The notes under the pieces were generated by a model. That model did not search any database, was not told the origin of the DNA, and saw nothing but the letters and a program-made list of their open reading frames with translations. A stretch of DNA of 64,000 nucleotides, from positions 167,976 to 231,975 of IMG/VR virus record IMGVR_UViG_3300042934_000547; one strand, 5' to 3'. The translations under genes were made by a program, and so were the position numbers. Positions 6,922-56,007 of this stretch are shown here, piece after piece. The stretch's first letter is position 1. The number at the start of each line of letters is the position of its first letter.

Positions 6922-7039
6922 TCGAATTCCCCCTGTTATTAAGATTATTAATTCTATCCTATATTAGATTAGAATCAATTTCATAAATATAATATATACT
7001 TATAAGTGTTTTTATGGAATTGAAATGATTAAGTGATTT

Positions 7040-7442
7040 AATTGGGTAGAAGAATTTTTTACCCTTCTCTTCTCCTTTCCCCCCTTAAACCCCCCTTTCC
7101 TCATCTCATCCCATTCACCCCTCTCCCTTATAATCTAGATTTAAATTATATTTATTTATTCTTTATTATTCTACCATCAATTCCATTATTCTTTATTTAT
7201 CTTTAATTTTATTTATTTTTCTTCTTTCTCTTTATTTCTTTTCTTTATTCTTCCTGAGCTTCATCCATGAACCCCAATCTCGCTTCGCTCGTTCATTGGG
7301 TTCATGTCTCTACGAGACATTTTAGAGTCCAAAGCCCCCTATAGAAAACACCCGGTAGTAAAAAACTACCGAATGCGGGGGCTTGGACATAGTTACAACG
7401 CTCGACAATATTAGTATCAACTTTTGTGATTATCCTATTGTT
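7040..7442. other. Non-coding pyrimidine-skewed tract plus hairpin cluster (candidate replication origin or ncRNA)
   Basis: C/T-rich + strand 7060-7255; inverted repeats 7266-7278/7295-7306, 7304-7310/7314-7320, 7327-7339/7377-7388, 7353-7359/7365-7371. Confidence 0.5.
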
Positions 7443-7516
7443 ATTCGTAAATATTTTTTATAAATTTTATAGTCCTTCAACAATACTATAAATAATCCTT
7501 AGGAGGATATAAATAA

Positions 7517-9361: not shown

Positions 9362-9535
9362 GAAAAAAAAATATCGGGTAGGAAATCAATCCTACCCATT
9401 AGGCATGTGTAAAAGTAATTGATTTATATGAATTAAAAAAGGAACGTTGTTGATGGAAAACAAATTTTAGGAGTTATACATAACAAATTGTCTTCACATG
9501 CCTATTTTATTTAACTGAAATTTTCTTATTCAATT
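9362..9535 (-). ncRNA. Candidate ~170-nt small RNA
   Basis: AACA-N6-TA at 9535-9546(-); closing stem 9400-9409/9495-9504; terminator hairpin 9376-9397 plus T-tract; no ORF. Confidence 0.5.
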
Positions 9536-14480: not shown

Positions 14481-15641
14481 ATGAGATATAGATATAAAGT
14501 AGGATTATCATGGACAGATCCAGTTGGAGTTGTAACAGAGTTTGATCCAGCTCTTGTGAAAAGTTTTATGATATATTCGGATTATGAGGGTAGTTTTTTA
14601 CCAATGATTGTTCTTAATATGAAGATTCGGGTTGATATATATGATAAAATAATACTTAATAAGGATAAAGGATTCTTTCTATTCACACTGAAGAAATACA
14701 AAGATTCTGATCCAAATTATGTAATGGAGGAGTCATATGTCGGTGTACAGTGTTCCTATTATACACTGGATGATATTAATTATCGTGAAAAGATAGTCGA
14801 AAACGCATCTGATAAAGAGGATTACCATAGGGTTGTAAATATCGGTTTAATCAGGGAGGATTTATTAACACAAAATAGATGCTCTGCTAATACTGTAATA
14901 AATACAAGTCTCATGGGAATAATATCATCACAAACTAAAGTTAAACGATTATTAACTGAATATATTGGAAAGAGTTATTCCGGTATTATTCCTCCTATTA
15001 GTAAGGTTTCAGAATTATTAAATTTCTTGGAGGATCAAATAGGACCATTCTATCCAACACCATATAGGTTTTTTATTGATAATGATAGAACGTATTTAAT
15101 ATCATCTAGTGGGCAACCTATATATGCTAAGGGAGACAAACAGTTCGCAGTCTCTATAGAAATATTAGATCCTACAGATGATAGAGTGCGTAATGATGGT
15201 GCAACCATGGACATATCAGGAAATATTTGTAACGTTCTTGTTAGTGCCGAAAGAACTAGATTTCAAATTGATAGTATTGAAGGTTCAAAAACTAATAAAT
15301 ACACCCATATAGGTTATGATACGAGTGTTGGTAACGTCGATGTCAATTTAATGACAAGAAAAGAATTAATTGGGCTTAACAAGTTTAGTTATAGTCCAGC
15401 TAAATTCCTGAATCACGATAAATTTACAGCTGAATTAAATAATAAGTCCCTAACAATCATGTTGGATGAATGTGACAATTCTATATTCACAATTAATCGT
15501 AAATTCATTATTAAAAATATTGAAAAATATAAACAGTATGACGGTGAATATTTATTGGTTAAGAAGATAGAAGGATTTATACAAGAAGGGGAAGTTTACA
15601 AAAGTATTGCGACAGTAGTTTTTAAAAAAATACCGAGGTAG
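14481..15641 (+). CDS. Putative tail/baseplate hub-like structural protein
   Basis: Beta-rich; SFMIYSDYEGSFLPMIVL N-terminus and YDGEYLLVKK C-terminus reminiscent of gp27-like hubs. Confidence 0.35.
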   Translation: MRYRYKVGLSWTDPVGVVTEFDPALVKSFMIYSDYEGSFLPMIVLNMKIRVDIYDKIILNKDKGFFLFTLKKYKDSDPNYVMEESYVGVQCSYYTLDDINYREKIVENASDKEDYHRVVNIGLIREDLLTQNRCSANTVINTSLMGIISSQTKVKRLLTEYIGKSYSGIIPPISKVSELLNFLEDQIGPFYPTPYRFFIDNDRTYLISSSGQPIYAKGDKQFAVSIEILDPTDDRVRNDGATMDISGNICNVLVSAERTRFQIDSIEGSKTNKYTHIGYDTSVGNVDVNLMTRKELIGLNKFSYSPAKFLNHDKFTAELNNKSLTIMLDECDNSIFTINRKFIIKNIEKYKQYDGEYLLVKKIEGFIQEGEVYKSIATVVFKKIPR

Positions 15642-15658
15642 GAAGAAATTCCTACCTC
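15635..15658. terminator. Bidirectional terminator
   Basis: gaggtaggaa-gaaa-ttcctacctc between convergent genes. Confidence 0.75.
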
Positions 15659-15672
15659 TAGTTTATTTTTTT

Positions 15673-17898
15673 TTATCGTTTCATTAGTTTTTGGAGGAAT
15701 GATTTATCCTTCTCTTGTGTAGGTTCTGGAACATTAATGTTTCCATTCTTAGCATAATATTTGGTAATAGCCTTTAGTTGATCATCTGAATACACATCTT
15801 TACTATTGATAGCTTTTCCGTTAGCGTAATGTGTGATTCGTGTTTTTACAATCTTCTTCCCATTTTCCTCAACAGTAACTTCTTGTTGAGTGATGCCATC
15901 TTTAGGCATATCAGGTTCTTGTCTCTTGCCGCCATTATTTCCAACCCCATCTTTATCAATTTTATCATTACCTATATAAGAACGAACGTGTTTTTCAAGT
16001 ATAGCTAAATACGTCTTCACACCTTCATCTAATGCTGTCATCTTAGCAGTCAATACAGCTGAACAAATTTCTTGATAACGAGTTACTAATTTAACGTCTT
16101 CAGAACTATCAACGACTTCTATTACCTTTTCTTTAGTATTGATAGATTTTATCTGGTCTACAGTATTTTTATTATCCTTAGTGTCAATTGGAACTTCTTT
16201 AGGTTGTTCATTACCCTTAGGTTCATCATTTGGTTTGTCCTGAGGATCTGCTTCTAATAATACCCTAGCTATAGATAACTCTGAATAAGATTCTTTGAAT
16301 GATTTTCTCTTAGGAGATAATTTAGTGATGATATTATCAATCATTTGTGATTCTCTCACATTTTTAGCTTTTGGTTTTAATTTATTTATAGCAGCTACAG
16401 AATTATTTATGAGTATAACGTTTACAGCTATACCAACATCTGTTACAGCTAATAATAACCCAGCTAGCAATCCGAGTATAGTTATACCTCCAATAAATGA
16501 TAAAGTAAGAGTAACTCCTAGTATAACTGTAGGGGCTCCTACTAAAACAGCTTGAGCTACTTTTCCGATAAGTTCAGCTATTTCTCCAGCAGTCTTTTCA
16601 TCTTTAACTCGTTTACTATACTGATGCTCTATAGTTCTAAGAAGTTTAGCCTCTTCTTTTGATAATTTATCAAAGTTGTTGGTAACTTCTTTCTTAGATT
16701 CACTCAGAATGTTGTTCAGAATGTAACTAGTATCAGTATCCCCGTATACCATCCTGTTATAGTCATCAGTAAGTCTATTGATTAAGTTTGAAACTATATC
16801 ATTACCAATCATGTGTCTAAATACATTTTTATGTGAAATGGATATCATGTTCTTGACATAATTATCGTTAGGATATTTACCCACTTGTTGGATTATGAAA
16901 TTTAGTATACAATAAACTGTGTTGAATGATACCATATAGAATGTTTCACGCTCGAATTCAAATGATGGAATATTATCTATAATACATGCAGCCACAATTC
17001 TTTCGTATAGATTACCAAGTTGATTAACGGCTGATTCATGATCCTGCATTAAATCAGTAACTACCATTTTAAATCTGTCAACAATATTCGCTTCAACCGT
17101 ATCTAAATAATCATAACCAAATTTTTCGTTATTGATATAGATAGTATTTTCGAACAATACGGAACCAACTTCTGTTACAGATTCACCCTGAGCTTTCTTC
17201 TCTAATTTTTCCTTATCCTTTTCATAACCAGCATTACTAGCGATTTCAGCAATCTTCTTAAGAGCTGTTTCTAATCTATCTTTCTCTTTCTTGATAGATT
17301 CTACCTGAGTGATAGCTTTCTTACAATATTGATAATATTCCCACATCGATTTATCTTTAAAATCGATACGTTCTACATCCATATTTTTTCCACCTTTGAA
17401 TAACAATGATGCCATTTGTGAATAATGACGATTTTTATCCATTAAGGCACTCCACTTAGCGTGGGTTAAGAAACTACTATCATCTTTTAATGCACCATTA
17501 TTTTTCATTTGCTCAAAATCAAATACTGGTATATCAGGGAAAGTTTCCATTTCCTTAAATCCATCTGGATAATAAGGGTACATGTCATATACTAAATCTA
17601 TTTTAACCGGTTTACGGATGGCATCTTCGTGTTTAGCTAACCAATCGATTTTCTTCATAAATACAGACTGCATTCTATCAAGGAATTTAGCCCATAACTC
17701 CTTAAGTTTATCAATTAGTTTTTTCCACTTATCTTTAACCCCGTCCGCAAAATTAGCTTCTTGGAGAATAGCTAACTCTTGTAAATTATATTTTCCAAGT
17801 AAAGCATTAGTCTCATTAACAGCCATCTTTAATAGAGCTTCTTGTTCTTCGTGTTTTACTATAACTGAATATTCCATATATTCATTTAAATAATTCAT
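15673..17898 (-). CDS. Internal head protein family member with large TM-containing insertion
   Basis: LQEA followed by the amphipathic helix shared with 19008..20150 and 20181..21257; hydrophobic hairpin at ~aa 450-498. Confidence 0.55.
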   Translation of the reverse strand: MNYLNEYMEYSVIVKHEEQEALLKMAVNETNALLGKYNLQELAILQEANFADGVKDKWKKLIDKLKELWAKFLDRMQSVFMKKIDWLAKHEDAIRKPVKIDLVYDMYPYYPDGFKEMETFPDIPVFDFEQMKNNGALKDDSSFLTHAKWSALMDKNRHYSQMASLLFKGGKNMDVERIDFKDKSMWEYYQYCKKAITQVESIKKEKDRLETALKKIAEIASNAGYEKDKEKLEKKAQGESVTEVGSVLFENTIYINNEKFGYDYLDTVEANIVDRFKMVVTDLMQDHESAVNQLGNLYERIVAACIIDNIPSFEFERETFYMVSFNTVYCILNFIIQQVGKYPNDNYVKNMISISHKNVFRHMIGNDIVSNLINRLTDDYNRMVYGDTDTSYILNNILSESKKEVTNNFDKLSKEEAKLLRTIEHQYSKRVKDEKTAGEIAELIGKVAQAVLVGAPTVILGVTLTLSFIGGITILGLLAGLLLAVTDVGIAVNVILINNSVAAINKLKPKAKNVRESQMIDNIITKLSPKRKSFKESYSELSIARVLLEADPQDKPNDEPKGNEQPKEVPIDTKDNKNTVDQIKSINTKEKVIEVVDSSEDVKLVTRYQEICSAVLTAKMTALDEGVKTYLAILEKHVRSYIGNDKIDKDGVGNNGGKRQEPDMPKDGITQQEVTVEENGKKIVKTRITHYANGKAINSKDVYSDDQLKAITKYYAKNGNINVPEPTQEKDKSFLQKLMKR

Positions 17899-45570: not shown

Positions 45571-45664
45571 ATAATCATCCTCCCAAAATCATATAATACT
45601 ATGTTTGAGAACGTGTATATTTATAATAGGGAACAATATAATAATAAAAATTAGGAGGAATAAT

Positions 45665-48600
45665 ATGTATTTTACTAATGAAATGAAACCAATGGTTTTG
45701 TATAAAAATAAAGTAAGATTACCTCGTGGGGAAAAAAGACTAGATAAGGGTAGTATTGTATTCTTATTAACACCGAATCTGGATAGTGTAATAAGAACTA
45801 TAAATAATCCCTTGTTTGATACCCGTTATTATGAGCATTTATTTATAGAAAGAGATGTGAGCTATTTCATTGGTAATAGAGAAGTTGTCAATGAAGACGG
45901 TGATATAACTGAGATATCTATGAGTGATAAATTCTTGTTAGAAGATCATGCTATACTTGAAACTGATAATCAAATCTTTTTAAGTCCATTAACTGAAGTT
46001 GATGGAGAGTACATGACTGTTCTTAAGAGAATGCTTTATAACGATAGGATGAAAACCCCAAAGACAATAGTAGCTAAGTATAATGAATACAATGAAAAAG
46101 CTGAAAAGAAGTTAAAGTGGAATCTCACACTTAACTTGTATCGTAAAGCTAACCTATTTTATGATATAAGCTACTATACCGAAACATTCTTTAAGAACCT
46201 TAAATTCGAAAAGGATAAAGCACTTGGTATCTATTTAGAATTTCTACAGAATTATTTAAATAGCTTTGATATGAAAAAATATGGCTATACAAAAAAGACC
46301 CTGATAATCCCATTAGAGGATTGGTATAATGTGGATAAGACATTCAATTATATAAATGCTATCAATCCAATTACATTATTCTTTAGGTACTTTAGGAAAG
46401 ACTTGGCTCTATTACAAAAAGTATTCACCGGATTTGATATGATATTTACTATTGGGGATAAATATTCGTTTAGAATCAATATTGACGAGTTCGATTATAA
46501 TAAAAATTATCCTACATTCGTTAGATATCTAAATGTGACAGCAAAGCAGGATGAAGTGAATAATTCTGAATTTGACATCGATGAAAATAATAAAGATTCT
46601 AGGGAAATCGTTAAAACCGATGTAAAAGAAGAAATAAGTAAAAATACAAAAATTAAAATGAAATCAGTCACTGGCGATGATGCTACTCCAAGTGCAGAAG
46701 AACTTGATAATGTTATAGATATCATCGTTGACGAAAAGATGAAAGAAACAGAAGAAGAGAATAATACTGAAGAAGTCTACGAAGAAATTGATAAAAATCC
46801 TGAAATAGCAAAACTGATTGCATATTCTAAAGACGAAGAGAAATTGTCTAAGTCGACAGCTAAACGAGAAATCAGAATAAATAAACTTAGGGATAGCTAT
46901 CAAGACGTCAGTATTAATAATAAAAAGATATCCAATCTTAAACCGTCAGTAGAAGCAGCGATACTAAAACCAGCTAAAGAAGTTAAGGTTGATGCTCTTG
47001 ACGATACATGGGATAATCTTACATATATGAACTTCGAAAAGACCTATAATAAGGAATTGAAGGATTATCATTTTGGTAAAATTTTGGAACATTTTGGAAC
47101 CAATGTAAAATATCCTATAATGGTAACTGATATTAAGGTAGAAAATAAGTCTACAACTGAGGATAAATATGATGAATATTCGATTGAAACAGAAGATAGT
47201 TTTGGTAAACGTGCTACATTAAAGATACACTTACCTAGATTTATTAATGATAGATCAATATTCATAAAAGGTAATGAAAAGAAATTACAAAAACAATTAG
47301 TATTATTCCCAGTAGCTAAAACAGAGACTAACTGTGTACAGATAGTATCTAACTACAACAAATTATTTATCGAGTTATTTGGAAGTACATCGAATGTAAT
47401 TGAAGATAGAATATTAAAGACTTTAACTAAACTTCAGGAAAAAGGCTCAAAAACTGTCAAAATTACAACTGGTAATGCTACAGAACTCAATAAATATTAT
47501 GTACTACCAAATGATTACGTAGAAATGAGTGGTAAGATATATCGTATAGAAGCAGATGACGTTACTTACTATTTTGACCAGTCTGAAATACGTGATATCA
47601 TTCTAAAGAAAAAACCTAATGAGAAGTTTGATACAGGAATACCTTTTGCTATCAATAATAAGACTAATATGGTATATGTATATGATGGAAATATTCCAGA
47701 TATTACATTTTCATATATGCTTAATGAGCACTTAAAACAAAATAAGGAATATAGTGAGGCATACGATGGTACTTCTATAGCTAAACGTTATTCATATAGT
47801 AGGGTTAGAATACTTAGTGCCAGAATTCCACTAATTGTCTTTTTAGCATTTAATGAGGGATTATTAACAGTATTGGATAAATCAAATGTCCAATATGAAA
47901 TACTCGACAAAAATGATAGAGATGACAGGGATTTATTTGACTACATTAAATTTAGCGATCGAGTTATAAAGTATAAAATAACTAATAACTCTAGCATTTT
48001 GATGAATGGATTAAAAGTTTGTAATACTCAAGAATATACATTAGCTGAAATGAATCAGAGCCAAAGTTATATAGATATCATTGGACAGTTTGGTTCTAAG
48101 ACATTAGCTGACCCTATTGAATCATTCCATGAGTTAGAGTTAGACCCAATGACTCTCGATGTTATTCATGATCTCAAACTACCTGATAAATTTACTGAGT
48201 TATTATTATATGCTAATGATATGCTATCAGATAATAGCTATGAAGATCATAATATCATATATAATAACAGATTAAGAAGCAATGAGATTATCAACGGTTT
48301 ACTATATAAATCTCTGTGTGAATCATACCAAGAATACAAGATGGGCATAAGAAATGGAAGAAGGGATAATAAAATATCCATAAAACCAACATGTGTTATT
48401 GATAAATTACTAACTCAAAATACTATGCTTGATGCATCAAAATCTACGGCATTATTGGAGATGGAAGAATCTGAAACTGCTAGTAAAAAGGGTTTTGGCG
48501 GAATGAACTTAGAAAAAGGATATAAGCTTAACAAAAGACAATATGATGAATCAATGTTAAACGTTCTATCTATATCATCCGTAGCAGGACCTACTATCGG

Positions 48601-49951
48601 GATTAACCGTAGTTTAACCATGAATGCTCAGATAACTGATGCTCATGGATATATCAGACCAACTGGTGTTAATGAAATGACTGCTGCTAATACATTTTGT
48701 ATAACAGAAGCATTAAATCCATTTGTTGCGACATCAGATGCTGGTGAAAGAATTGCTATGACGTATTCTCAAGGTAAGCATACCGTTAGAACACAGCGTT
48801 CATCACCATTGCTTGTTACATATGGAGCCGATGAAGCTATGCCATATATGATATCAGATACATTTGCATATAAGGCACCTTTCGATGGTAAGATAAAGGA
48901 AATAACTGATGATTACATTGCATTAGAATCCAATGATAATGAAACTCACTATGTTGCTACAGAAACAATAAGTAAAAACGTCAATACCGGTACATTCAAT
49001 GCAATTAAGTTAAAGAGTGATTTAAAAGTAGGACAGAAATTTAAAGAGGGTTCTATAATTGCACACGACCCATTATCATTTAGTGGAGAAGTCGGTCAAA
49101 CAGATAACTTAGCATATAATGTCGGATGTATGGCTAAAGTAGGTGTAGTTGCATATCCTTTTGGATTCGAAGACTCATGTAAAATTACTAAGCAATTAGC
49201 TAGAAATATGATGTCTCAAGTTACTACTAAAAAAGAAATTAATCTGGGTAAAAATGCTAACGTGTTCAATTTGATTAACAAGGGTGATGATGTTCAACAA
49301 GGTCAATCTTTAATGGTAATACAAAACTCATTCGATGATGAGGATTTAAATATTGTCTTAAAGAATATGATTACAGATGAAGACGGAGACTCAGAAGTTA
49401 TTGATGATTTAGGAAGAATTCCAGTTAAATCTAAATATACAGGTCGTATCGAAGATATTAAAATCTTTAGAACTGTTGAATTGAGCGAATTATCTCCCAC
49501 ACTAAGAAAGTTATGCGAGAAATATGAAGCTCCTACGAAAAAATTAAGGAATCAAATGAAAAAAGAAAAGAATAATCAGGTTTATTCAGATGTGGTTGAA
49601 CAACCTGACTATAAACTTGAACCAACTGGACAGTTAAAAGGTATCCCAAATGGTGAAGGTGTTCAGATAAGAATATCTATAACCTATAACGATATCATGG
49701 CATGGGGTGACAAATTAACATTTACTGTTGCTCTTAAAGGTACAGTAGGCGATACTTATGATGAAGACAAAGTTCCGTATTCATCATATAGGAAGGATGA
49801 GCACATAGATACCCTGCTTAACTCAACTTCTGTAAATAAACGTATGACTCCATCAGTATTTAAAATCGGTGGTAGTAATAAATTTGCCATCGAATTAGGT
49901 AGACAAGTTAAAGACATGCTTGGAATACCATACGATGTAAATTTCAGATAA
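45665..49951 (+). CDS. Phage multisubunit RNA polymerase beta-like subunit (probably virion RNAP)
   Basis: FIKGNEKKLQKQL, KKGFGGMN, AGPTIGINRSL, NPFVATSDAGERIAM, GFEDS, GDKL...KG, LLNSTSVNKRM are collinear with RpoB motifs; late-type promoter; start after AGGAGG. Confidence 0.88.
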   Translation: MYFTNEMKPMVLYKNKVRLPRGEKRLDKGSIVFLLTPNLDSVIRTINNPLFDTRYYEHLFIERDVSYFIGNREVVNEDGDITEISMSDKFLLEDHAILETDNQIFLSPLTEVDGEYMTVLKRMLYNDRMKTPKTIVAKYNEYNEKAEKKLKWNLTLNLYRKANLFYDISYYTETFFKNLKFEKDKALGIYLEFLQNYLNSFDMKKYGYTKKTLIIPLEDWYNVDKTFNYINAINPITLFFRYFRKDLALLQKVFTGFDMIFTIGDKYSFRINIDEFDYNKNYPTFVRYLNVTAKQDEVNNSEFDIDENNKDSREIVKTDVKEEISKNTKIKMKSVTGDDATPSAEELDNVIDIIVDEKMKETEEENNTEEVYEEIDKNPEIAKLIAYSKDEEKLSKSTAKREIRINKLRDSYQDVSINNKKISNLKPSVEAAILKPAKEVKVDALDDTWDNLTYMNFEKTYNKELKDYHFGKILEHFGTNVKYPIMVTDIKVENKSTTEDKYDEYSIETEDSFGKRATLKIHLPRFINDRSIFIKGNEKKLQKQLVLFPVAKTETNCVQIVSNYNKLFIELFGSTSNVIEDRILKTLTKLQEKGSKTVKITTGNATELNKYYVLPNDYVEMSGKIYRIEADDVTYYFDQSEIRDIILKKKPNEKFDTGIPFAINNKTNMVYVYDGNIPDITFSYMLNEHLKQNKEYSEAYDGTSIAKRYSYSRVRILSARIPLIVFLAFNEGLLTVLDKSNVQYEILDKNDRDDRDLFDYIKFSDRVIKYKITNNSSILMNGLKVCNTQEYTLAEMNQSQSYIDIIGQFGSKTLADPIESFHELELDPMTLDVIHDLKLPDKFTELLLYANDMLSDNSYEDHNIIYNNRLRSNEIINGLLYKSLCESYQEYKMGIRNGRRDNKISIKPTCVIDKLLTQNTMLDASKSTALLEMEESETASKKGFGGMNLEKGYKLNKRQYDESMLNVLSISSVAGPTIGINRSLTMNAQITDAHGYIRPTGVNEMTAANTFCITEALNPFVATSDAGERIAMTYSQGKHTVRTQRSSPLLVTYGADEAMPYMISDTFAYKAPFDGKIKEITDDYIALESNDNETHYVATETISKNVNTGTFNAIKLKSDLKVGQKFKEGSIIAHDPLSFSGEVGQTDNLAYNVGCMAKVGVVAYPFGFEDSCKITKQLARNMMSQVTTKKEINLGKNANVFNLINKGDDVQQGQSLMVIQNSFDDEDLNIVLKNMITDEDGDSEVIDDLGRIPVKSKYTGRIEDIKIFRTVELSELSPTLRKLCEKYEAPTKKLRNQMKKEKNNQVYSDVVEQPDYKLEPTGQLKGIPNGEGVQIRISITYNDIMAWGDKLTFTVALKGTVGDTYDEDKVPYSSYRKDEHIDTLLNSTSVNKRMTPSVFKIGGSNKFAIELGRQVKDMLGIPYDVNFR

Positions 49952-49969
49952 ATTAAACAAAGCTTATAT

Positions 49970-49993
49970 AGAGTAGGATTCAAATCCTACTCT
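49970..49993 (+). terminator. Intrinsic terminator after RNAP gene
   Basis: agagtaggat-tcaa-atcctactct plus T-rich tract. Confidence 0.8.
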
Positions 49994-50026
49994 AATTTTT
50001 ATTTAAATTTCCTATAACAATATAAT

Positions 50027-50525
50027 AGATATTGTTTGATTATAAATGCTTAAACCGGTTAGCTTTTAATCGATAAGACAGTATCCATATAGTATTTAGA
50101 TATGCCGGCAGCCCCTTATAATGGACCATTAGTAAACTAAAATGATCATTGATGGTATTGTGGGCTTATGCTGGCAAAATCTTACTTCCAATTATGCACT
50201 TCGAGTTAAAGTAGCATGGTAATATAGTGTCCCCCGGGTAAGTCGTCCCCTACCCTTCTTGATACCGTGCTACTAAGTGTATAATGTAACATTTGGATAA
50301 TATTTAGGATTTGGTTACCGTTTAACCCATTCTAAATTTTATTATATATTTTTTCTTCTTTTACTACACCTCATTTTGTTAGGTGCATTGGTTTTCTCCT
50401 TTCTCTATTTGTATGACAAGCACTTAAAATAGCGTAATAAGAATAGCTACTTATTACGCTATATTGGGTGTGAGTATTAATAATTTGAAAAAAAAATAAT
50501 GAGGTAGGATTAATTTCCTACCTCT
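50027..50525 (+). ncRNA. Candidate large structured ncRNA (~450-500 nt)
   Basis: ORF-free, locally GC-enriched; AACA-N6-TA at 50016-50027; multiple stems with recurrent G-U pairs on the + strand; hairpin 50501-50524 plus T-rich tract. Confidence 0.65.
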
Positions 50526-50530
50526 TCTTT

Positions 50531-50908
50531 TTATTCTTTAATTTCGTACGTCACCATAATCTGCGTAAACGTTAATTTTCCTGATGATGGTATAAGTCTA
50601 TTTGAATCAGATTTAATCCCAATCATTTCATCTATATCACGTAAAAATTCAAATATATTTTGAATGTCTTTAATAATATCAATGTAAATGATTACTGATT
50701 TACCACGAATTACAGCCATAGATATTCTATAAGACGGTAATATAAATGGTTTAATGCGTATATCTTCATTGTCGAATTTGAATACTATATCATCTCGATG
50801 TGGAAATACTTCTCCATATGAAATAATCTTTTTAACATCTTTTGTCTCAACTAAATGGAGTTGTTTAAATTTTTCTAGATAGTAGTTCTTATTCATTGTC
50901 ATCTTCAT
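50531..50908 (-). CDS. Hypothetical protein
   Basis: N-terminus MNKNYYLEK and layout resemble the adjacent 50889..51623 protein. Confidence 0.55.
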   Translation of the reverse strand: MKMTMNKNYYLEKFKQLHLVETKDVKKIISYGEVFPHRDDIVFKFDNEDIRIKPFILPSYRISMAVIRGKSVIIYIDIIKDIQNIFEFLRDIDEMIGIKSDSNRLIPSSGKLTFTQIMVTYEIKE

Positions 50909-51623
50909 CCCATTTTAATTGATATTTGATGGTTATGTACATTCCATCATCCTTACCACCCATTTCAATATCAGGTTCACTTAATGGTAACACACCACGT
51001 ATCAAATTTATCATTCCATTAATACTATCCATTGGGCACATGAAATCACCCCATACTCTAAGTGATATATTTAAGGACTCTTCTTGAGTACAATCTACAT
51101 GTATATCAACTGAATTTTGTTCATTAAGCATTTTTTCGATTTCGAGAAATGCTTCGAATTCATTTATTTGATGGAATTTATATTTCATTTTATGGTGTGT
51201 AAATATAGTTTCTATTTTTGGAATTACATTCTTTCTAATAACACTGATTTTTGTATCCAAATCATAGTAATATTTGAATATAATCTTGATTGCTGCAAAC
51301 GCATATTCATCTTCATCCTTTGGATACACAGAGATTTCACCACATGGTGGTAAACCTAACTTTTTCCTGATTTGCTCATTAAATAATGCAAAATTGTCAA
51401 ATCCATCTACGGTATCAATGATGATGTGAAGTATATTATTATCAAATATCATCACCTGAAGATTTTTCAGGTCAGGTTCATGAATCCTGTCAACCAAGTT
51501 ATCGGTACGATAATATTCATAATCACTTTTAATTTCACCTATAAATCTTTGAGTACTTTCTTTTATTAAATCAAACTTACCTAACTTGGTTTGTAATATT
51601 TTTAAATATTCGTCTTTATTCAT
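50889..51623 (-). CDS. Hypothetical protein
   Basis: 244 aa, AAGGAG RBS. Confidence 0.6.
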   Translation of the reverse strand: MNKDEYLKILQTKLGKFDLIKESTQRFIGEIKSDYEYYRTDNLVDRIHEPDLKNLQVMIFDNNILHIIIDTVDGFDNFALFNEQIRKKLGLPPCGEISVYPKDEDEYAFAAIKIIFKYYYDLDTKISVIRKNVIPKIETIFTHHKMKYKFHQINEFEAFLEIEKMLNEQNSVDIHVDCTQEESLNISLRVWGDFMCPMDSINGMINLIRGVLPLSEPDIEMGGKDDGMYITIKYQLKWDEDDNE

Positions 51624-52143
51624 TTTCGTTCTCCTTCAATTCATCATATATTTGTTGAGAAGCTATAGTTCCTCGTGATTGTTGTTTATTTATTGGTAAT
51701 GATTTAGCCCACTCTAATAACTCGATGTGAAGTTTAAATAAAATATCAGAATCAATTGGAATCCTGTTACGTGTCTTACTATCTTTGACACGTAATACTT
51801 TTTGAATTTTATTTGTATCTTCTATTACTCGACCTTTATGAATGGTTGTATAATATTTATCCTCCACCTCGAAATTATCTGGAATGTGTGGTAATACAAT
51901 ACCTACATCAAACAGAATATACATACGATTGGCTTCATCACGAGTCCCATAGTGACCAGCACAACAGAATACTGTGCGATAGTTCTTTTTATTTAATTCA
52001 ATGATTGTTGGTATAATCATCTCATCAATCTCTCCAAAGTATGTACCACTATGGCATTCAGTTCTAGGACAACTTCTAACCCCTTCTCTTAAAGTAGAAC
52101 CATCGTAAATATTGAAACATCTTAGACATACATATTTACTCAT
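51616..52143 (-). CDS. Zn-ribbon protein with phage T..CC.GH domain
   Basis: CLRC...CPRTEC and LNKKNYRTVFCCAGH. Confidence 0.55.
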   Translation of the reverse strand: MSKYVCLRCFNIYDGSTLREGVRSCPRTECHSGTYFGEIDEMIIPTIIELNKKNYRTVFCCAGHYGTRDEANRMYILFDVGIVLPHIPDNFEVEDKYYTTIHKGRVIEDTNKIQKVLRVKDSKTRNRIPIDSDILFKLHIELLEWAKSLPINKQQSRGTIASQQIYDELKENENE

Positions 52144-53221
52144 TTTTATTTACCTCTTTTATATAATTTGACAACGATTTAACAAATTCAATTTCCATAT
52201 TTGAACTCGTAAATCCAGCGGCATTTTTATGCCCTCCACCACCATGCTTCATACATATTTCAACTACACTAACTTCCTTAGAATATAGTGTATATTTATA
52301 TTTCTCGCCATTAAACGTAAAAAGTATACAAAAATCGAATTTATCGATAAGTTCTTCGAAAGCAAATGAATTACCTAATCCTTCATTTAGACATAAGCAA
52401 GTGTGTCCATCTAATTTACCGATGAATCCGTATTCATTTAATTTTGATATATATTCTTTCTCTTTTGGAAGTGAATCTATTCTACCGTCATCAATTACAT
52501 CATTAATATCTATACAGGTATGCTCTGGATTTAATATATTTAAATTCAATGCATTAGATAAAATATCATCATTTAACCATTCATTCCATAATTTATATCC
52601 ACTCTCTTCAGTTAATAATTCTCTATTTAAACCAAAAGTCCCTCTATTAAAATATCTAGCCACTTTATTAGGAAGTAGATGTTTCCATGTGTCGTAATCA
52701 TCGACTAACTTTAAAATGTATGGTATATGATAATCATCATATTGCTCGATGATATTAGTCGTTCCATCAACCTGCAATTTAGATTGTACTTTGTTACAAG
52801 GACTTATGAATAATCCTATATATGCTAAATAAGCACCACATGCAGATTTATTTATCATACCAAATAATCGATTTTCATTTTCATCAATAAATGTTGGATT
52901 TCCTTTTATAAAATCGAATGATGAGTCATGATGGTCAAACCATATTACTTCAACTGAATGGTCAAATAAGAATTTAAATATCCCTAATGCTTCCTCTAAA
53001 TTGAAAGAATAATCCACGATGTAAATTCTATCATATTTACAATTTCGTGTACATACAACTCTTTTTATTTCCTCTAAATCATTCTTTACGTGATTTAGTG
53101 TGATTGTATCAATCTCAGCTGGTTTATTAAGATTAGCATGTAAATCACATAAAGCACCTCCTAACATTCCGTCATTATCATGATGCCTTATTACTAAAAA
53201 TTTCTTAGTTTCCATAATCAT
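52136..53221 (-). CDS. DHH/DHHA1-family phosphoesterase
   Basis: HHDNDG, IVDYS, WFDHH, DDYD.W, GGGGHKNAAGF. Confidence 0.92.
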   Translation of the reverse strand: MIMETKKFLVIRHHDNDGMLGGALCDLHANLNKPAEIDTITLNHVKNDLEEIKRVVCTRNCKYDRIYIVDYSFNLEEALGIFKFLFDHSVEVIWFDHHDSSFDFIKGNPTFIDENENRLFGMINKSACGAYLAYIGLFISPCNKVQSKLQVDGTTNIIEQYDDYHIPYILKLVDDYDTWKHLLPNKVARYFNRGTFGLNRELLTEESGYKLWNEWLNDDILSNALNLNILNPEHTCIDINDVIDDGRIDSLPKEKEYISKLNEYGFIGKLDGHTCLCLNEGLGNSFAFEELIDKFDFCILFTFNGEKYKYTLYSKEVSVVEICMKHGGGGHKNAAGFTSSNMEIEFVKSLSNYIKEVNKNE

Positions 53222-53372
53222 TTCCTTTCTTCTCCACGACTATAATAAGTCAATAAGTATTTTGTGGTTATCATTTCTTAATTGAAATAATTATTTAGAT
53301 TTATTTTACCTATCAAATATATAATATATATCTGAAATTATTAACAATTACATCTAATTAAGGAGGTGATTC

Positions 53373-54161
53373 GTGATGATTGAAATAACTAGCTTGAATG
53401 AGGCTAAAAGAAAGAAACCAGAAGAAGACGATGATGATTCTCGTTATGAATTAGAAGATGAACCTAACGAAGAAGAAACAGATGAAGATGACGTGGGCGA
53501 ACCTGATGACGAAGAAGATGTTGACTATAATATCGGTGATGATGAAGGTGAACCTGATGAAGAAGAACCTGATGAAGAAGAACTTGATGATGATGGTAAT
53601 ATTGAGGATACCCAATACGAATTAGGTGACGAGGATGAACCTGATGCGGAAAATGTTGATGACGAAGATACGGGTGAAGAATCAGATTTAGAAAACGATG
53701 ATGGTGGTAATTACGATATGGATGATGAAGATCCTGAAGGAGAAGGCGATGAAGGAACACCAGATGGAGAAACTGATGATATTGATGATTCTGCTAGCCA
53801 ACATCCTGATTATATAGATATAAATAACATCGAATCCGAAGTAGCCAGCCAAATATTAAACAATCAGGAACTTCTAGTTAGGAAGAATAACCTGAAGAAG
53901 TTATTTAAAAATCTTTATGACAGTATTGAGCAATATATTAATAAATTATCCAATATGTCAATTGCTGATTCTGAAGAAGAAAAACAGGTAAATGAGATAA
54001 TTAATCAGTTAAAGGAAGCCAAAGTATTATTGATTGATTATGTTTCTGATGTGTATGATATTAAGTCGTATACAGAGAATTTAACCCAATACTACCAGTA
54101 TATTGCACTTCTGGAAAATATATTTGCAGTAATAAAGATGCTAAATGATAAACACAAGTAA
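53373..54161 (+). CDS. Highly acidic protein upstream of the capsid gene (scaffold-like?)
   Basis: About 125 aa of D/E-rich low complexity plus helical C-terminus; SLNEA site. Confidence 0.55.
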   Translation: MMIEITSLNEAKRKKPEEDDDDSRYELEDEPNEEETDEDDVGEPDDEEDVDYNIGDDEGEPDEEEPDEEELDDDGNIEDTQYELGDEDEPDAENVDDEDTGEESDLENDDGGNYDMDDEDPEGEGDEGTPDGETDDIDDSASQHPDYIDINNIESEVASQILNNQELLVRKNNLKKLFKNLYDSIEQYINKLSNMSIADSEEEKQVNEIINQLKEAKVLLIDYVSDVYDIKSYTENLTQYYQYIALLENIFAVIKMLNDKHK

Positions 54162-54201
54162 ATACTGCTATTTTATAGCACTATAGGTATTATTTTTACA
54201 T

Positions 54202-54213
54202 AACAATATAATA
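54202..54213 (+). promoter_or_regulatory. Late-type promoter motif AACA-N6-TA, representative copy
   Basis: Also at 2333(-), 7431(-), 7479(+), 9535(-), 10558(-), 10642(+), 23709(-), 24190(+), 27989(+), 43546(-), 45594(-), 45632(+), 50016(+), 57315(+). Confidence 0.75.
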
Positions 54214-54246: not shown

Positions 54247-56007
54247 ATGCAATATGGTACTAGACAAAGAGTGAATAATGATATAGCTGGTATGAGCTAT
54301 AAAAAAGATAAGCTTTATAAATATGCTGAGCAAACTAATGAGTTGAGAACAGCAATTAAGGAAGAAACTGGGTTAGATATATTTACTACTCCGGGAGGTA
54401 TATCAAATGATAGATATGCCGTTGCGAGAAACCAGTTAAAGGATTTCTTCGTACAAGAATCATACGATCCTGATTTGGTAACTACATTGGACGAACAATC
54501 AGCAGTTATGGATGACATGGGTGCTTTGTTCGAAAACATGATGGATGCTATGGAAACAACTGTAGGTTCTCCTATTCAGACTAACCTTAACGAGTCTGTT
54601 GCGTTGAACACTTTGAATCCAATCATCGCTATGTCTCCAATGATATACAAAGATATATTGATTAACAATATATTCCAAAGTGCTATCGATACTGCTGTTG
54701 CTGTAAGTCCTATCGTACCAATAAGACATGAGCACAGATATTTAGTTTCGGTTGACGGAACTAAGAAGATTGATATTTCTAAGCAGCAACACATGATAAA
54801 ATCATTTATGGATGAAACTGCTCCATTTAAAGAAATAGTAATCACTCTTCCAGAAAACGGTTCAGTTGACATAATTGCTGCATTAAACGGCAATAATTCT
54901 GATTCATTATCAACAGCTTCTTATATTTCTAAGATTGTTATTGATAAAACTGCTGCACCTGTTGAACCTGCAACTGAAATTGAAACAGTAGAAAGACTCT
55001 GTGATTTCAGATTATTACCACAAGGTTTCAATACTACATCTGCTCAAAGATATTTGATCCAAGATGTATTGTTACCTTACTTAGATGCTCAAGGTAATCC
55101 AGTGGCAGACACAATGACTGTTACTATGAACAATAACAAATTAACAGCTATGTCTTCAATGGGTAAAATAAGATCTATAACTTTCAAAGCAAGACTTGAT
55201 ACTTCAACAGCAATGTTAAAGACTTGTACAACTGCTTGGGAGCATGAAAATACACAAATCGGAATCGATGATGGTATGCCTCTTGCTACTACTGTTAACC
55301 CAAGTGAATTGAAAGATATTGCAGCTTTATTCAATATTGATCAGTTGACTAAAGTTATGAGTATATTCAGAGACACAATGGCTAACTACAAAGACAGCCA
55401 CATTTATGAATACCTAGTTGATTCTTATAATAGAATGCCTGATGATTTCGGTGGAAAATTCTCTGGTAAATTCGACTTTGCTGATATAGCAGGATATCAT
55501 GTACAGAATCCAGAATCTTGGAGACATGAAGCATTTATGCCTATATTGGACTCTTATATTTCAGATGCTTTACAACATTTAAGAGACCCTAATATATCAG
55601 TAACAATATTAGGTAGACCTGACCTTATCAGAAAGATCGAGCCTTCTAAATACGAATATCAGTCTCCAAAGAATATCGGTGCTATTCCTCTTGAATTCAA
55701 CAGAACTGTTACTACTAACCACGGCAGACAGTACAACTTCAACAGCTCAATGAAGATTAACTATGATACAGCAAACAGAAACAAATTCAGAGTTGTATTT
55801 AATCCTACATCATCTGAACGTTTCATCTACAGACTGTACAACTACCAGTTAGTAATTTCTAATGAAATCAAAGCTCAGGAGAACTTAGCATTGCCATCAG
55901 TATATGCATTCGAAAGATTCAAAGTTACTGAATGGCAACCAGTTCAAGGTGAAATTCTTGCAGTTAATCCTTCAGGATTCACTAAACCTGAATACGCTAA
56001 CCTGTAA
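54247..56007 (+). CDS. Probable major capsid protein precursor
   Basis: 586 aa; perfect RBS; late-type promoter 54202-54213; high-expression codon bias (ttc/aac/tac); propeptide ending ~NLNES; own terminator. Confidence 0.65.
   Translation: MQYGTRQRVNNDIAGMSYKKDKLYKYAEQTNELRTAIKEETGLDIFTTPGGISNDRYAVARNQLKDFFVQESYDPDLVTTLDEQSAVMDDMGALFENMMDAMETTVGSPIQTNLNESVALNTLNPIIAMSPMIYKDILINNIFQSAIDTAVAVSPIVPIRHEHRYLVSVDGTKKIDISKQQHMIKSFMDETAPFKEIVITLPENGSVDIIAALNGNNSDSLSTASYISKIVIDKTAAPVEPATEIETVERLCDFRLLPQGFNTTSAQRYLIQDVLLPYLDAQGNPVADTMTVTMNNNKLTAMSSMGKIRSITFKARLDTSTAMLKTCTTAWEHENTQIGIDDGMPLATTVNPSELKDIAALFNIDQLTKVMSIFRDTMANYKDSHIYEYLVDSYNRMPDDFGGKFSGKFDFADIAGYHVQNPESWRHEAFMPILDSYISDALQHLRDPNISVTILGRPDLIRKIEPSKYEYQSPKNIGAIPLEFNRTVTTNHGRQYNFNSSMKINYDTANRNKFRVVFNPTSSERFIYRLYNYQLVISNEIKAQENLALPSVYAFERFKVTEWQPVQGEILAVNPSGFTKPEYANL

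What the first reader, a model, noticed from the sequence alone, without database searches (positions are those of the whole stretch)
50016..50530. Unannotated ~500-nt structured RNA gene directly downstream of the phage RNAP beta gene
Seen: an ORF-free, GC-enriched ~550-bp gap in an otherwise compact genome. It sits after the RNAP terminator, starts with its own AACA-N6-TA motif (50016-50027) and ends in a hairpin plus T-rich tract (50501-50530). Stems: tgccggca+gccc (50103-50114) with gggc+tgctggca (50162-50176); attatgcactt (50191-50201) with aagtgtataat (50275-50285); agtagcatggta (50210-50221) with taccgtgctact (50263-50274), enclosing gggta/taccc and two gtcccc tracts; 50297-50310 with 50329-50342; and 50421-50441 with 50450-50470. 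Four of these stems contain G-U pairs on the + strand (A-C on the minus strand), which favours a + strand RNA over DNA cruciforms. A single-stranded UUUCUCCUUUCU tract (50392-50404) is complementary to SD regions such as the tape-measure RBS. Inference: a late, multi-domain phage ncRNA (RNAP-associated decoy, packaging RNA or antisense regulator). I do not recognise it as tRNA, tmRNA, RNase P, SRP or an intron.
Basis: partly seen in the sequence, partly recalled or inferred. Interest (0 to 1): 0.85.

Follow-up and report, generated by a model that had tools for sequence, protein, structure and literature searches.

The report
Orphan late noncoding RNA in jumbo phage
A 500-base stretch of an uncultured giant phage has its own strong late promoter and terminator, no protein-coding frame and a strand-specific folded shape, so it is probably a new noncoding RNA; no relative of it was found, so its role is only inferred.

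Summary
Window 49952-50530 has no coding frame. It starts with an AR9-type late promoter (AACA-N6-TA) whose 14-mer is identical to the promoter of the major head protein gene. It ends in a bidirectional terminator. It folds well below shuffled controls (z -6.9), and each of five domains folds better on the + strand. The + fold has 15 G-U pairs and no A-C mismatch. The GC-rich core is in the top 1-2% of the window. No Rfam family, tRNA, tmRNA or protein remnant matches.

Three points limit the claim:
- No homologue was found in any collection searched, so covariation cannot be tested.
- The link to the RNAP beta gene is not conserved. In the closest relative, RNAP beta runs straight into the gene before the head protein gene. 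The RNA therefore lies at the edge of a 3.4-kb lineage-specific island (49952-53372).
- Strongly folding ORF-free gaps are common in this phage clade (median best z -5.3), so the z-score alone proves little.

Best reading: an abundant late + strand noncoding RNA. Its likeliest role is base-pairing through exposed C-rich and anti-Shine-Dalgarno tracts; that role is inferred, not shown. Interest is moderate.

The parts
49969..49994 (+). Intrinsic terminator of the virion RNAP beta gene (perfect 12-bp arms by the repeat finder; 11 pairs in the terminator scan; then a T-run). It shields the RNA unit from read-through.
50014..50027 (+). AR9-type late promoter ATAACAATATAATA (AACA-N6-TA). The predicted start is the final A at 50027.
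   Evidence: The 14-mer is identical to the major head protein promoter at 54200-54213 and is conserved in relative L076. Consensus and start-site rule are from PMC5312081.
50027..50533 (+). Predicted noncoding transcript of about 505 nt.
   Evidence: The ends are inferred from the promoter and terminator, not measured.
50028..50085 (+). D0: AU-rich 5' hairpin that pairs the 5' end (-13.0 kcal/mol on +, -6.0 on -).
50098..50182 (+). D1: GC-rich long hairpin (-29.4 on +, z -3.9; -20.5 on -, z -1.8).
50191..50285 (+). D2: 11 + 12 bp helix with an 8-nt one-sided bulge. Its 41-nt apical region carries two C-rich tracts (UGUCCCCC 50228-50235, GUCCCCU 50244-50250) around a small GGGUA/UACCC hairpin.
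   Evidence: (I7)
50296..50343 (+). D3: hairpin (-13.1 on +, -8.2 on -).
50344..50415 (+). Pyrimidine-rich, mostly unpaired linker. It holds a small CACCU/AGGUG hairpin (50368-50385) and the anti-SD-like tract UUUUCUCCUUUCUCU (50392-50406).
50371..50407 (-). Opposite-strand reading of the same letters: SD-like AAAGGAG, then ATG (50388-50386) and a 5-codon ORF (MHLTK, stop). It resembles real start sites of this phage. No promoter was found for it.
50416..50475 (+). D5: 21-bp hairpin with a perfect 13-bp core (z -7.7 on +, -5.2 on -).
   Evidence: I2
50501..50524 (.). Bidirectional intrinsic terminator, with a T-run on + and an A-run (T-run on -) before it. It ends the RNA and the convergent minus-strand operon.
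49952..53372 (.). 3.4-kb lineage-specific island: the RNA unit plus four minus-strand genes (125, 244 and 175 aa orphans and a 361-aa DHH phosphoesterase). These genes are driven from an AR9-type early motif at 53321-53329.

Best explanation
Window 50027 to about 50533 (+) is a noncoding RNA gene of an uncultured AR9/phiR1-37-like jumbo phage.

Shown from sequence:
- It has a late promoter identical to the one in front of the major head protein gene.
- It has no coding frame.
- It has five structured domains that fold better as + strand RNA.
- It has its own terminator and is also shielded by the RNAP beta terminator upstream.
- It lies at the left edge of a 3.4-kb accessory island that the closest relative lacks.

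Inferred:
- The phage's non-virion RNA polymerase makes it in large amounts late in infection.
- It acts in trans by base pairing. The stable GC-rich hairpins D1-D3 and D5 would serve as a scaffold and as protection from nucleases.
- The two exposed C-rich tracts at the tip of D2 and the unpaired CUCCUUUCU tract would bind purine-rich ribosome-binding sites of mRNAs. These could be phage mRNAs such as those of genes 43509(-), 59435, 62893 and 44478(-), or host mRNAs.
- That binding would lower or retime their translation, in the manner of the C-rich-loop regulatory RNAs of Firmicutes.
For: Promoter:
- The 12-mer AACAATATAATA occurs three times in the window, all on + and all intergenic: before RNAP beta, before the head protein gene, and here.
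- The same motif class sits 20-45 nt upstream of SD and ATG at about a dozen genes.
- The AR9 late consensus is AACA-N6-TA/G with the last base as the start site (PMC5312081).
- The 14-mer is conserved at the head gene of a relative with 61% protein identity.

Noncoding.

Structure:
- z -6.9 on + against -4.8 on -.
- Five of five domains are more stable on +.
- 15 G-U pairs and 0 A-C mismatches on +, against 4 G-U and 5 A-C/C-A on -.
- Core GC is at the 98-99th percentile although the DNA is noncoding.

Terminators.

Accessible tracts.

Complementarity to start sites: the mean best duplex with 49 start sites is -16.9 kcal/mol, against -15.4 +/- 0.47 in shuffles; 0 of 200 shuffles were as low. 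Two matches of 16/17 were found.
Against: - No homologue was found anywhere, so there is no covariation and no evidence of purifying selection.
- Strongly folding ORF-free gaps are common in this clade (median best z -5.3, quartile -9.4). The z-score is therefore not special.
- The anti-SD tract reads equally well as an SD plus ATG on the minus strand. The excess complementarity follows from that one tract.
- The individual 16/17 matches have blastn E-values of about 0.45.
- No expression data exist; the phage is known only from a metagenome.
- Host mRNAs could not be examined.
Confidence: 0.6

Rival explanations
1. A hairpin-rich spacer or decayed cassette without a function of its own. On this view it is junk left at a recombination hotspot: a copied late promoter, terminator-like hairpins that insulate convergent transcription, and the remains of a lost gene.
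For: - It sits at a synteny breakpoint next to orphan genes.
- No homologue was found.
- Related phages have many strongly folding ORF-free gaps made of terminator arrays, (TA)n palindromes and long inverted repeats.
- There is an SD plus ATG with only 5 codons on the minus strand.
Against: - The core GC is at the 98-99th percentile, whereas most other gaps of 200 bp or more in the window peak at 0.25-0.36 per 200 nt; the exception, 6922-7516 (0.43), is itself a second RNA candidate.
- G-U pairs occur only on the + strand and no A-C mismatches do.
- The promoter matches the strongest late promoter exactly.
- There is no trace of protein similarity in any frame.
Confidence: 0.17
2. The promoter mainly drives late antisense transcription into the convergent early operon (50531-53221). 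The 500-nt structured region would be a leader that controls read-through of the 50501-50524 terminator.
For: - AR9 has late promoters that drive antisense transcripts late in infection (PMC5312081).
- The operon opposite has an early-type motif.
- 50368-50380 can pair with 50493-50505, which includes the 5' arm of the terminator. This is a possible anti-terminator (I9).
Against: - The terminator is strong (9 bp with 5 G-C pairs, then a T-run) and is kept in the minimum-free-energy and centroid folds.
- The alternative pairing is weaker and AU-rich.
- No ligand- or protein-binding motif was recognised.
Confidence: 0.1
3. A protein-binding decoy or scaffold RNA. Examples would be a 6S-like trap for the phage or host RNA polymerase, a packaging RNA, or a decoy for a host nuclease or defence protein.
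For: - It is made late and probably abundantly, next to a virion RNAP gene.
- It has long 21-23 bp helices that double-strand-specific proteins could bind.
- The 5' end carries UGUU, which are the letters of the template-strand promoter element. This is read directly from the sequence and is a speculation.
Against: - No 6S, pRNA or other family match even at E <= 10.
- The shape is a chain of hairpins, not one long helix with a central bubble.
- Linkage to the RNAP gene is not conserved.
Confidence: 0.08
4. A DNA-level element (replication origin, packaging site or cruciform), or a minus-strand feature, rather than a + strand RNA.
For: - Inverted repeats fold on both strands (z -4.8 on -).
- D5 has a perfect 13-bp palindrome core.
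Against: - No iterons or direct-repeat arrays.
- The wobble asymmetry favours + RNA.
- No late or early promoter motif on the minus strand inside the gap.
- The minus-strand operon terminates before it.
Confidence: 0.05

Closest known systems
AR9 late transcription units (Bacillus jumbo phage AR9; promoters for the non-virion RNA polymerase)
   Same: The promoter grammar is the same: AACA-N6-TA/G with the last base as the start site. It is used here in front of virion genes (RNAP beta, major head protein) and in front of the RNA. The AR9-type early motif ATATATTAT is also over-represented in the window (23 against 9 expected). Basis.
   Different: The AR9 study reports late promoters before protein genes, inside ORFs, or driving antisense RNAs. 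From what I read of it, it describes no free-standing 500-nt ORF-less unit with its own terminator.
C-rich-loop regulatory RNAs of Firmicutes (S. aureus RNAIII, about 514 nt with many hairpins; RsaE/RoxS). From my own knowledge.
   Same: Similar size to RNAIII. It is a chain of stable hairpins with its own promoter and terminator. It has unpaired UCCC-type tracts and an anti-SD-like tract that could pair with ribosome-binding sites.
   Different: No sequence or structure match to any Rfam model at E <= 10. It is encoded by a lytic jumbo phage and read from a phage-polymerase promoter. The targets are unproven.
Small RNAs of virulent phages (PAK_P3 sRNA1 and sRNA2, T4 band C/D RNAs, PA5oct ncRNAs)
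   Same: These are also intergenic, strongly expressed late, and of unknown or only proposed translational role (PMC4933390; PMC7318152, abstract).
   Different: Those RNAs are about 100 nt and were found by RNA-seq. This one is about 500 nt, is predicted from sequence only, and is unrelated in sequence.
Large phage-associated structured RNAs (GOLLD, ROOL) and 6S RNA, phi29 pRNA, group I introns
   Same: It is a large noncoding RNA carried by a phage.
   Different: No match to any of them. There is no multi-junction ornate architecture, no central-bubble helix, and it does not interrupt a gene.

Membership tests
AR9-type late (non-virion RNAP) transcription unit | AACA-N6-T(A/G) motif immediately upstream of the start site | tested here: met
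   50016-50027 is AACAATATAATA. The consensus is from PMC5312081.
AR9-type late (non-virion RNAP) transcription unit | The same motif is used upstream of late or virion genes in the same genome | tested here: met
   The identical 12-mer lies before RNAP beta (45632) and the major head protein gene (54202). About a dozen further AACA-N6-TA sites lie 20-45 nt upstream of SD and ATG. The bare motif is not enriched genome-wide (49 against 80 expected), so position and extended identity carry the weight.
AR9-type late (non-virion RNAP) transcription unit | A transcript 5' end at the final A/G that appears late in infection | not testable with these tools
   No expression data; the phage is uncultured.
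Any curated RNA family (Rfam 15: tRNA, tmRNA, 6S, RNase P, SRP, group I/II introns, pRNA, GOLLD, ROOL, RNAIII, RsaE and others) | Score at or above the family's gathering threshold | tested here: not met
   0 hits in the whole window. At E <= 10 there were only chance-level hits to snoRNA and leader models, mostly on the terminators. ARAGORN found nothing.
Trans-acting base-pairing regulatory RNA | Own promoter and terminator, and no ORF | tested here: met
Trans-acting base-pairing regulatory RNA | An accessible seed with more complementarity to target start sites than chance gives | tested here: inconclusive
   The tracts are predicted unpaired. Mean duplex energy with 49 start sites beats 200 of 200 shuffles. 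But the signal comes from one SD-complementary tract, which could be a minus-strand SD instead, and the single matches have E about 0.45.
Conserved structured RNA | Homologues with compensatory base changes | tested here: not met
   No homologue to test was found in: phage and plasmid records; 66 related loci totalling 1.5 Mb, searched by nhmmer, blastn and a covariance model; viral, metagenome and genome collections, searched by pattern or flanking protein.
6S-like RNA polymerase decoy | One long irregular helix with a central open-promoter-like bubble | tested here: not met
   The fold is a chain of separate hairpins, and no 6S model matched.
Pseudogene or recoded gene | A frame that opens when one stop codon is read through, or pieces similar to known proteins | tested here: not met
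   Every frame has 12 or more stops of mixed kinds. tblastx against related loci, tblastn of the longest piece against phages, and Pfam and PHROGs scans of all pieces gave nothing.

The most novel reading that the evidence does not exclude
A new class of large late RNA made by a phage multisubunit RNA polymerase. It would mimic the 3' end of 16S rRNA and carry C-rich loops, soaking up ribosome-binding sites of early or host mRNAs. That would switch translation to the late programme: an RNA counterpart of protein-based early shut-off. It would travel as part of a mobile accessory island.
Probability: 0.1. Interest if true: 0.75.

Novelty: new variant of a known kind. Interest (0 to 1): 0.45.

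Why it matters
Jumbo phages with their own multisubunit RNA polymerases are studied as self-sufficient transcription systems, yet almost no noncoding RNAs are known from them. If this RNA is real, it would show three things. First, the strongest late promoter type is also used to make a long structured RNA. Second, such RNAs can arrive with accessory gene islands. Third, the many strongly folding, Rfam-negative gaps in this large uncultured clade deserve a systematic RNA search. The practical value is limited for now: the phage is uncultured and the RNA has no known relatives.

Tried and rejected
1. Known RNA family. Rfam at gathering threshold on the whole window and at E <= 10 on the region, plus ARAGORN, gave nothing.

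2. Recoded or broken gene. Stop counts in six frames, tblastx against 1.5 Mb of related loci, tblastn of the 41-aa piece against phages, and Pfam and PHROGs scans of all pieces gave nothing.

3. Homologues by DNA similarity. All of these were negative:
- blastn 'distant' against phages and plasmids;
- nhmmer and blastn against 66 related RNAP loci;
- a covariance model of D2 over 1.57 Mb, which found only itself;
- exact or degenerate patterns in viral contigs, genome contigs and metagenome contigs. The four extra hits are chance matches in contigs of 56-68% GC.

4. Homologues by synteny.
- RNAP beta relatives: the closest, at 64% identity, has a gene directly after RNAP, and a 45% relative has no gap.
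- The flanking 244-aa protein is an orphan.
- The 125-aa protein is not on record.
- Head protein relatives gave contig L076, which stops short of the region but overlaps L004.
- A search with the 262-aa protein returned only itself above 33% identity.
- A metagenome scan with the RNAP C-terminus found nothing.

5. A family of RNAs after RNAP beta in distant relatives. Nine of 51 loci have ORF-free gaps of 250 bp or more there, some with AACA-N6-TA. They do not align with the window or with each other. Their folding is not significantly stronger than that of other gaps (Mann-Whitney p = 0.13).

6. Stop-codon recoding in relatives. Apparent multi-kb gaps were an artefact of giant ORFs running off the locus ends.

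7. Replication-origin iterons: none.

8. RNA-RNA pairing with the second candidate at 6922-7516. The global duplex calculation was not informative.

Full report
SOURCE AND CONTEXT. The window comes from IMG/VR contig IMGVR_UViG_3300042934_000547, 231,975 bp. The 1,428-aa product of 45665-49951 is a fused RNA polymerase beta subunit. It is 30-33% identical to those of Staphylococcus jumbo phages, Listeria phage LPJP1 and Yersinia phage phiR1-37. In phiR1-37 the homologue g099 is annotated as a structural protein, so this is the virion polymerase. The window also uses AR9 transcription signals. The AR9 early motif core ATATATTAT occurs 23 times against 9 expected. The AR9 late consensus AACA-N6-TA/G, whose last base is the start site (PMC5312081), lies 20-45 nt upstream of SD and ATG at about a dozen genes.

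Region 49952-50530 holds no ORF longer than 29 aa. Each of the six frames has 12-19 stops of mixed kinds, so no single stop-codon reassignment opens a frame. Both terminators are found: 49969-49994 on +, and 50501-50524 on both strands. The 515-nt stretch folds at -143.8 kcal/mol against -102.7 +/- 6.0 for shuffles, z -6.9. The reverse strand reaches -123.8, z -4.8. The 'GC-enriched' claim needs a correction. The gap as a whole is at the genome average (0.311). The core around 50070-50300 reaches 0.405-0.415 per 200 nt, the 98-99th percentile of the window. Most other gaps of 200 bp or more peak at 0.25-0.36 per 200 nt; the exception is 6922-7516 at 0.43.

PROMOTER. The exact 12-mer AACAATATAATA occurs three times in 64 kb, always on + and always intergenic: at 45632 before RNAP beta, at 54202 before the gene at 54247, and at 50016. 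My own estimate from base composition is about 0.16 expected occurrences. The gene at 54247 is the major head protein (phrog_20655). Its promoter shares the 14-mer ATAACAATATAATA with the RNA unit. The same 14-mer precedes the head protein gene of a relative with 61% protein identity (L076 411-424). So the RNA unit carries a copy of what is probably the phage's strongest late promoter. No SD or usable start codon follows it. No early-type motif lies in the gap.

STRAND. Each of five domains is more stable on + than on -:
- D0: -13.0 against -6.0 kcal/mol
- D1: -29.4 against -20.5
- D2: -31.8 against -29.1
- D3: -13.1 against -8.2
- D5: -26.2 against -19.1
The + strand helices contain 15 G-U pairs and no A-C single mismatch. 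The - strand folds contain 4 G-U pairs, and the main helices carry 5 A-C/C-A mismatches. A DNA palindrome or a - strand RNA would not give this one-sided pattern. Together with the promoter and the T-run after the 50501-50524 hairpin, this favours a + strand RNA from about 50027 to about 50533.

ARCHITECTURE. In order from the 5' end:
- an AU-rich hairpin, D0;
- three GC-rich hairpins, D1-D3;
- within D2, an 11 + 12 bp helix whose 41-nt tip exposes UGUCCCCC and GUCCCCU;
- a roughly 70-nt pyrimidine-rich, mostly unpaired linker that carries CACCUC and UUUUCUCCUUUCUCU;
- a 21-bp hairpin, D5;
- an A-rich linker;
- the terminator.
It is a chain of hairpins, not an ornate multi-junction fold.

WHAT IT IS NOT. 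It matches no Rfam family at gathering threshold, and at E <= 10 only chance-level hits appear. It is not a tRNA or tmRNA. It shows no protein remnant and no iterons.

NO RELATIVES, AND THE RNAP LINK IS NOT CONSERVED. Every DNA-level search found only the window itself. The flanking 244-aa protein is an orphan among 5.8 billion proteins. The closest RNAP beta (64% identity, contig L004) is followed after 17 nt by a protein gene. The end of L004 overlaps the start of L076, the contig with the closest head protein, by 24 nt with one mismatch. The partial gene on L076 is 51% identical to window gene 53373-54161. In that relative the order is therefore RNAP beta, then that gene, then the head protein gene. 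In the window, 3.4 kb (49952-53372) lies between RNAP beta and that gene. This segment holds the RNA unit and a convergent operon of three orphans and a DHH phosphoesterase. The operon is read from an early-type motif at 53321-53329. The cultured relatives phiR1-37, LPJP1 and S6 have no gap after the gene either. The RNA is thus part of a lineage-specific accessory island, not a conserved companion of the polymerase gene.

A CONTROL THAT TEMPERS THE Z-SCORE. In 51 non-redundant related loci, 75 ORF-free gaps of 250-950 bp have a median best-strand z of -5.3 and a lower quartile of -9.4. These arise from terminator arrays, (TA)n palindromes, long inverted repeats and hairpin-rich repeats. Nine of the 51 loci have such a gap right after RNAP beta, some with AACA-N6-TA. 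They do not align with the window or with each other. The eight that were folded do not fold significantly better than other gaps (p = 0.13). Folding strength alone is therefore weak evidence here. The case rests on the promoter, the terminators, the GC-rich core and the wobble asymmetry.

MECHANISM (INFERRED). The exposed tracts are the kind that regulatory RNAs of Firmicutes use to pair with ribosome-binding sites; this comparison is from my own knowledge. The mean best duplex energy with the 49 start sites of the window is -16.9 kcal/mol, against -15.4 +/- 0.47 for 200 shuffles, none of which was as low. The tract 50386-50409 is 16/17 complementary to the start sites of genes 59435 and 43509(-). 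The C-rich tip is predicted to pair with the GGGGA-type sites of 62893 and 44478(-).

The caveat is serious. Read on the minus strand, the same letters are AAAGGAGAAAACCAATG, a typical start site of this phage, followed by only five codons. That reading has no promoter and lies beyond the operon's terminator, so I rank it lower. The statistics cannot separate the two readings.

Rivals are: a functionless hairpin-rich spacer at a recombination hotspot; a leader controlling late antisense transcription into the early operon (AR9 has late antisense RNAs, and a possible anti-terminator pairing exists, I9); a protein decoy or scaffold; or a DNA-level element.

VERDICT. This is a credible, sharply delimited late noncoding RNA gene with no known family and no known relatives. 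I estimate about 0.7 that a defined + strand RNA is made, and about 0.35 that it works by pairing with ribosome-binding sites. It belongs to a known kind, phage-encoded noncoding RNAs (PMC4933390). It is unusual in size, in its promoter type and in its place in an accessory island. Interest is moderate until expression or relatives are shown.

Noticed in passing
window 6922-7516 (minus strand): A second ORF-free gap with a late-type promoter (AACAATAGGATA, 7442-7431, minus strand). Reading along the minus strand, it is followed by GC-rich hairpins including a perfect 12-bp stem (GUCCAAGCCCCC with GGGGGCUUUGGA) lying within about 7327-7388, a roughly 200-nt purine-rich stretch with two GGGGGG runs, an early-type motif (6997-6989), and the start of gene 6921(-). 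Its 200-nt GC peak is 0.43 and its z is about -5. It is either a long structured late leader or a second noncoding RNA.
   Followed up: partly
window 7076-7101 and L041 about 17171-17196: A 26-nt C-tract motif is 96% identical between the window's 6922-7516 gap and an intergenic gap of a distant relative. Nothing else in these gaps aligns.
   Followed up: no
window 49973-49990, 50504-50521, 15624-15659, 9377-9396: Several terminators share the hairpin core GTAGGA-loop-TCCTAC, as if one terminator hairpin has been copied around the genome.
   Followed up: no
window 49952-53372: A 3.4-kb island absent from the closest relative. It carries an early operon of three orphan proteins and a DHH/DHHA1 phosphoesterase (52136-53221, phrog_4771). 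This enzyme family includes nanoRNases and cyclic-dinucleotide phosphodiesterases, so a role in host takeover or counter-defence is conceivable.
   Followed up: partly
window 53344-53357: The gene at 53373 has no canonical AACA-N6-TA promoter. The nearest candidate is AACA-N8-TA just upstream of its SD. In the closest relative this gene follows RNAP beta without a terminator between them.
   Followed up: no
L053 19496-20417 and 23187-24081: Two paralogous ORF-free copies of about 900 nt, 72% identical over 882 nt. They are very strongly folding (z -15 to -16), have 38-39% GC and match no Rfam family. They are a candidate large repeated RNA or hairpin-array element in a distant relative.
   Followed up: partly
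L061 1467-2180; L030 18471-19376; L019 18618-19522: Related phages carry intergenic regions with a giant inverted repeat (z about -31), or with (TA)n palindromes plus perfect hairpins (z -12 to -16). The L019 and L030 regions have no Rfam hit. Hairpin-rich noncoding DNA is a general trait of the clade.
   Followed up: partly
Staphylococcus jumbo phage records H1, H4, H6, H10, H11: The RNAP beta homologue matches in 2-3 separated pieces over 2.7-3.4 kb in several Staphylococcus jumbo phages, suggesting intervening sequences there. The window's gene is uninterrupted.
   Followed up: no
window 49935-49951 and 50001-50017: The last 17 nt of the RNAP beta ORF recur, 14 of 17 identical, just after its terminator and overlapping the start of the RNA promoter. 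This may be a recombination scar at the island's left edge, or chance in AT-rich DNA (D4).
   Followed up: no
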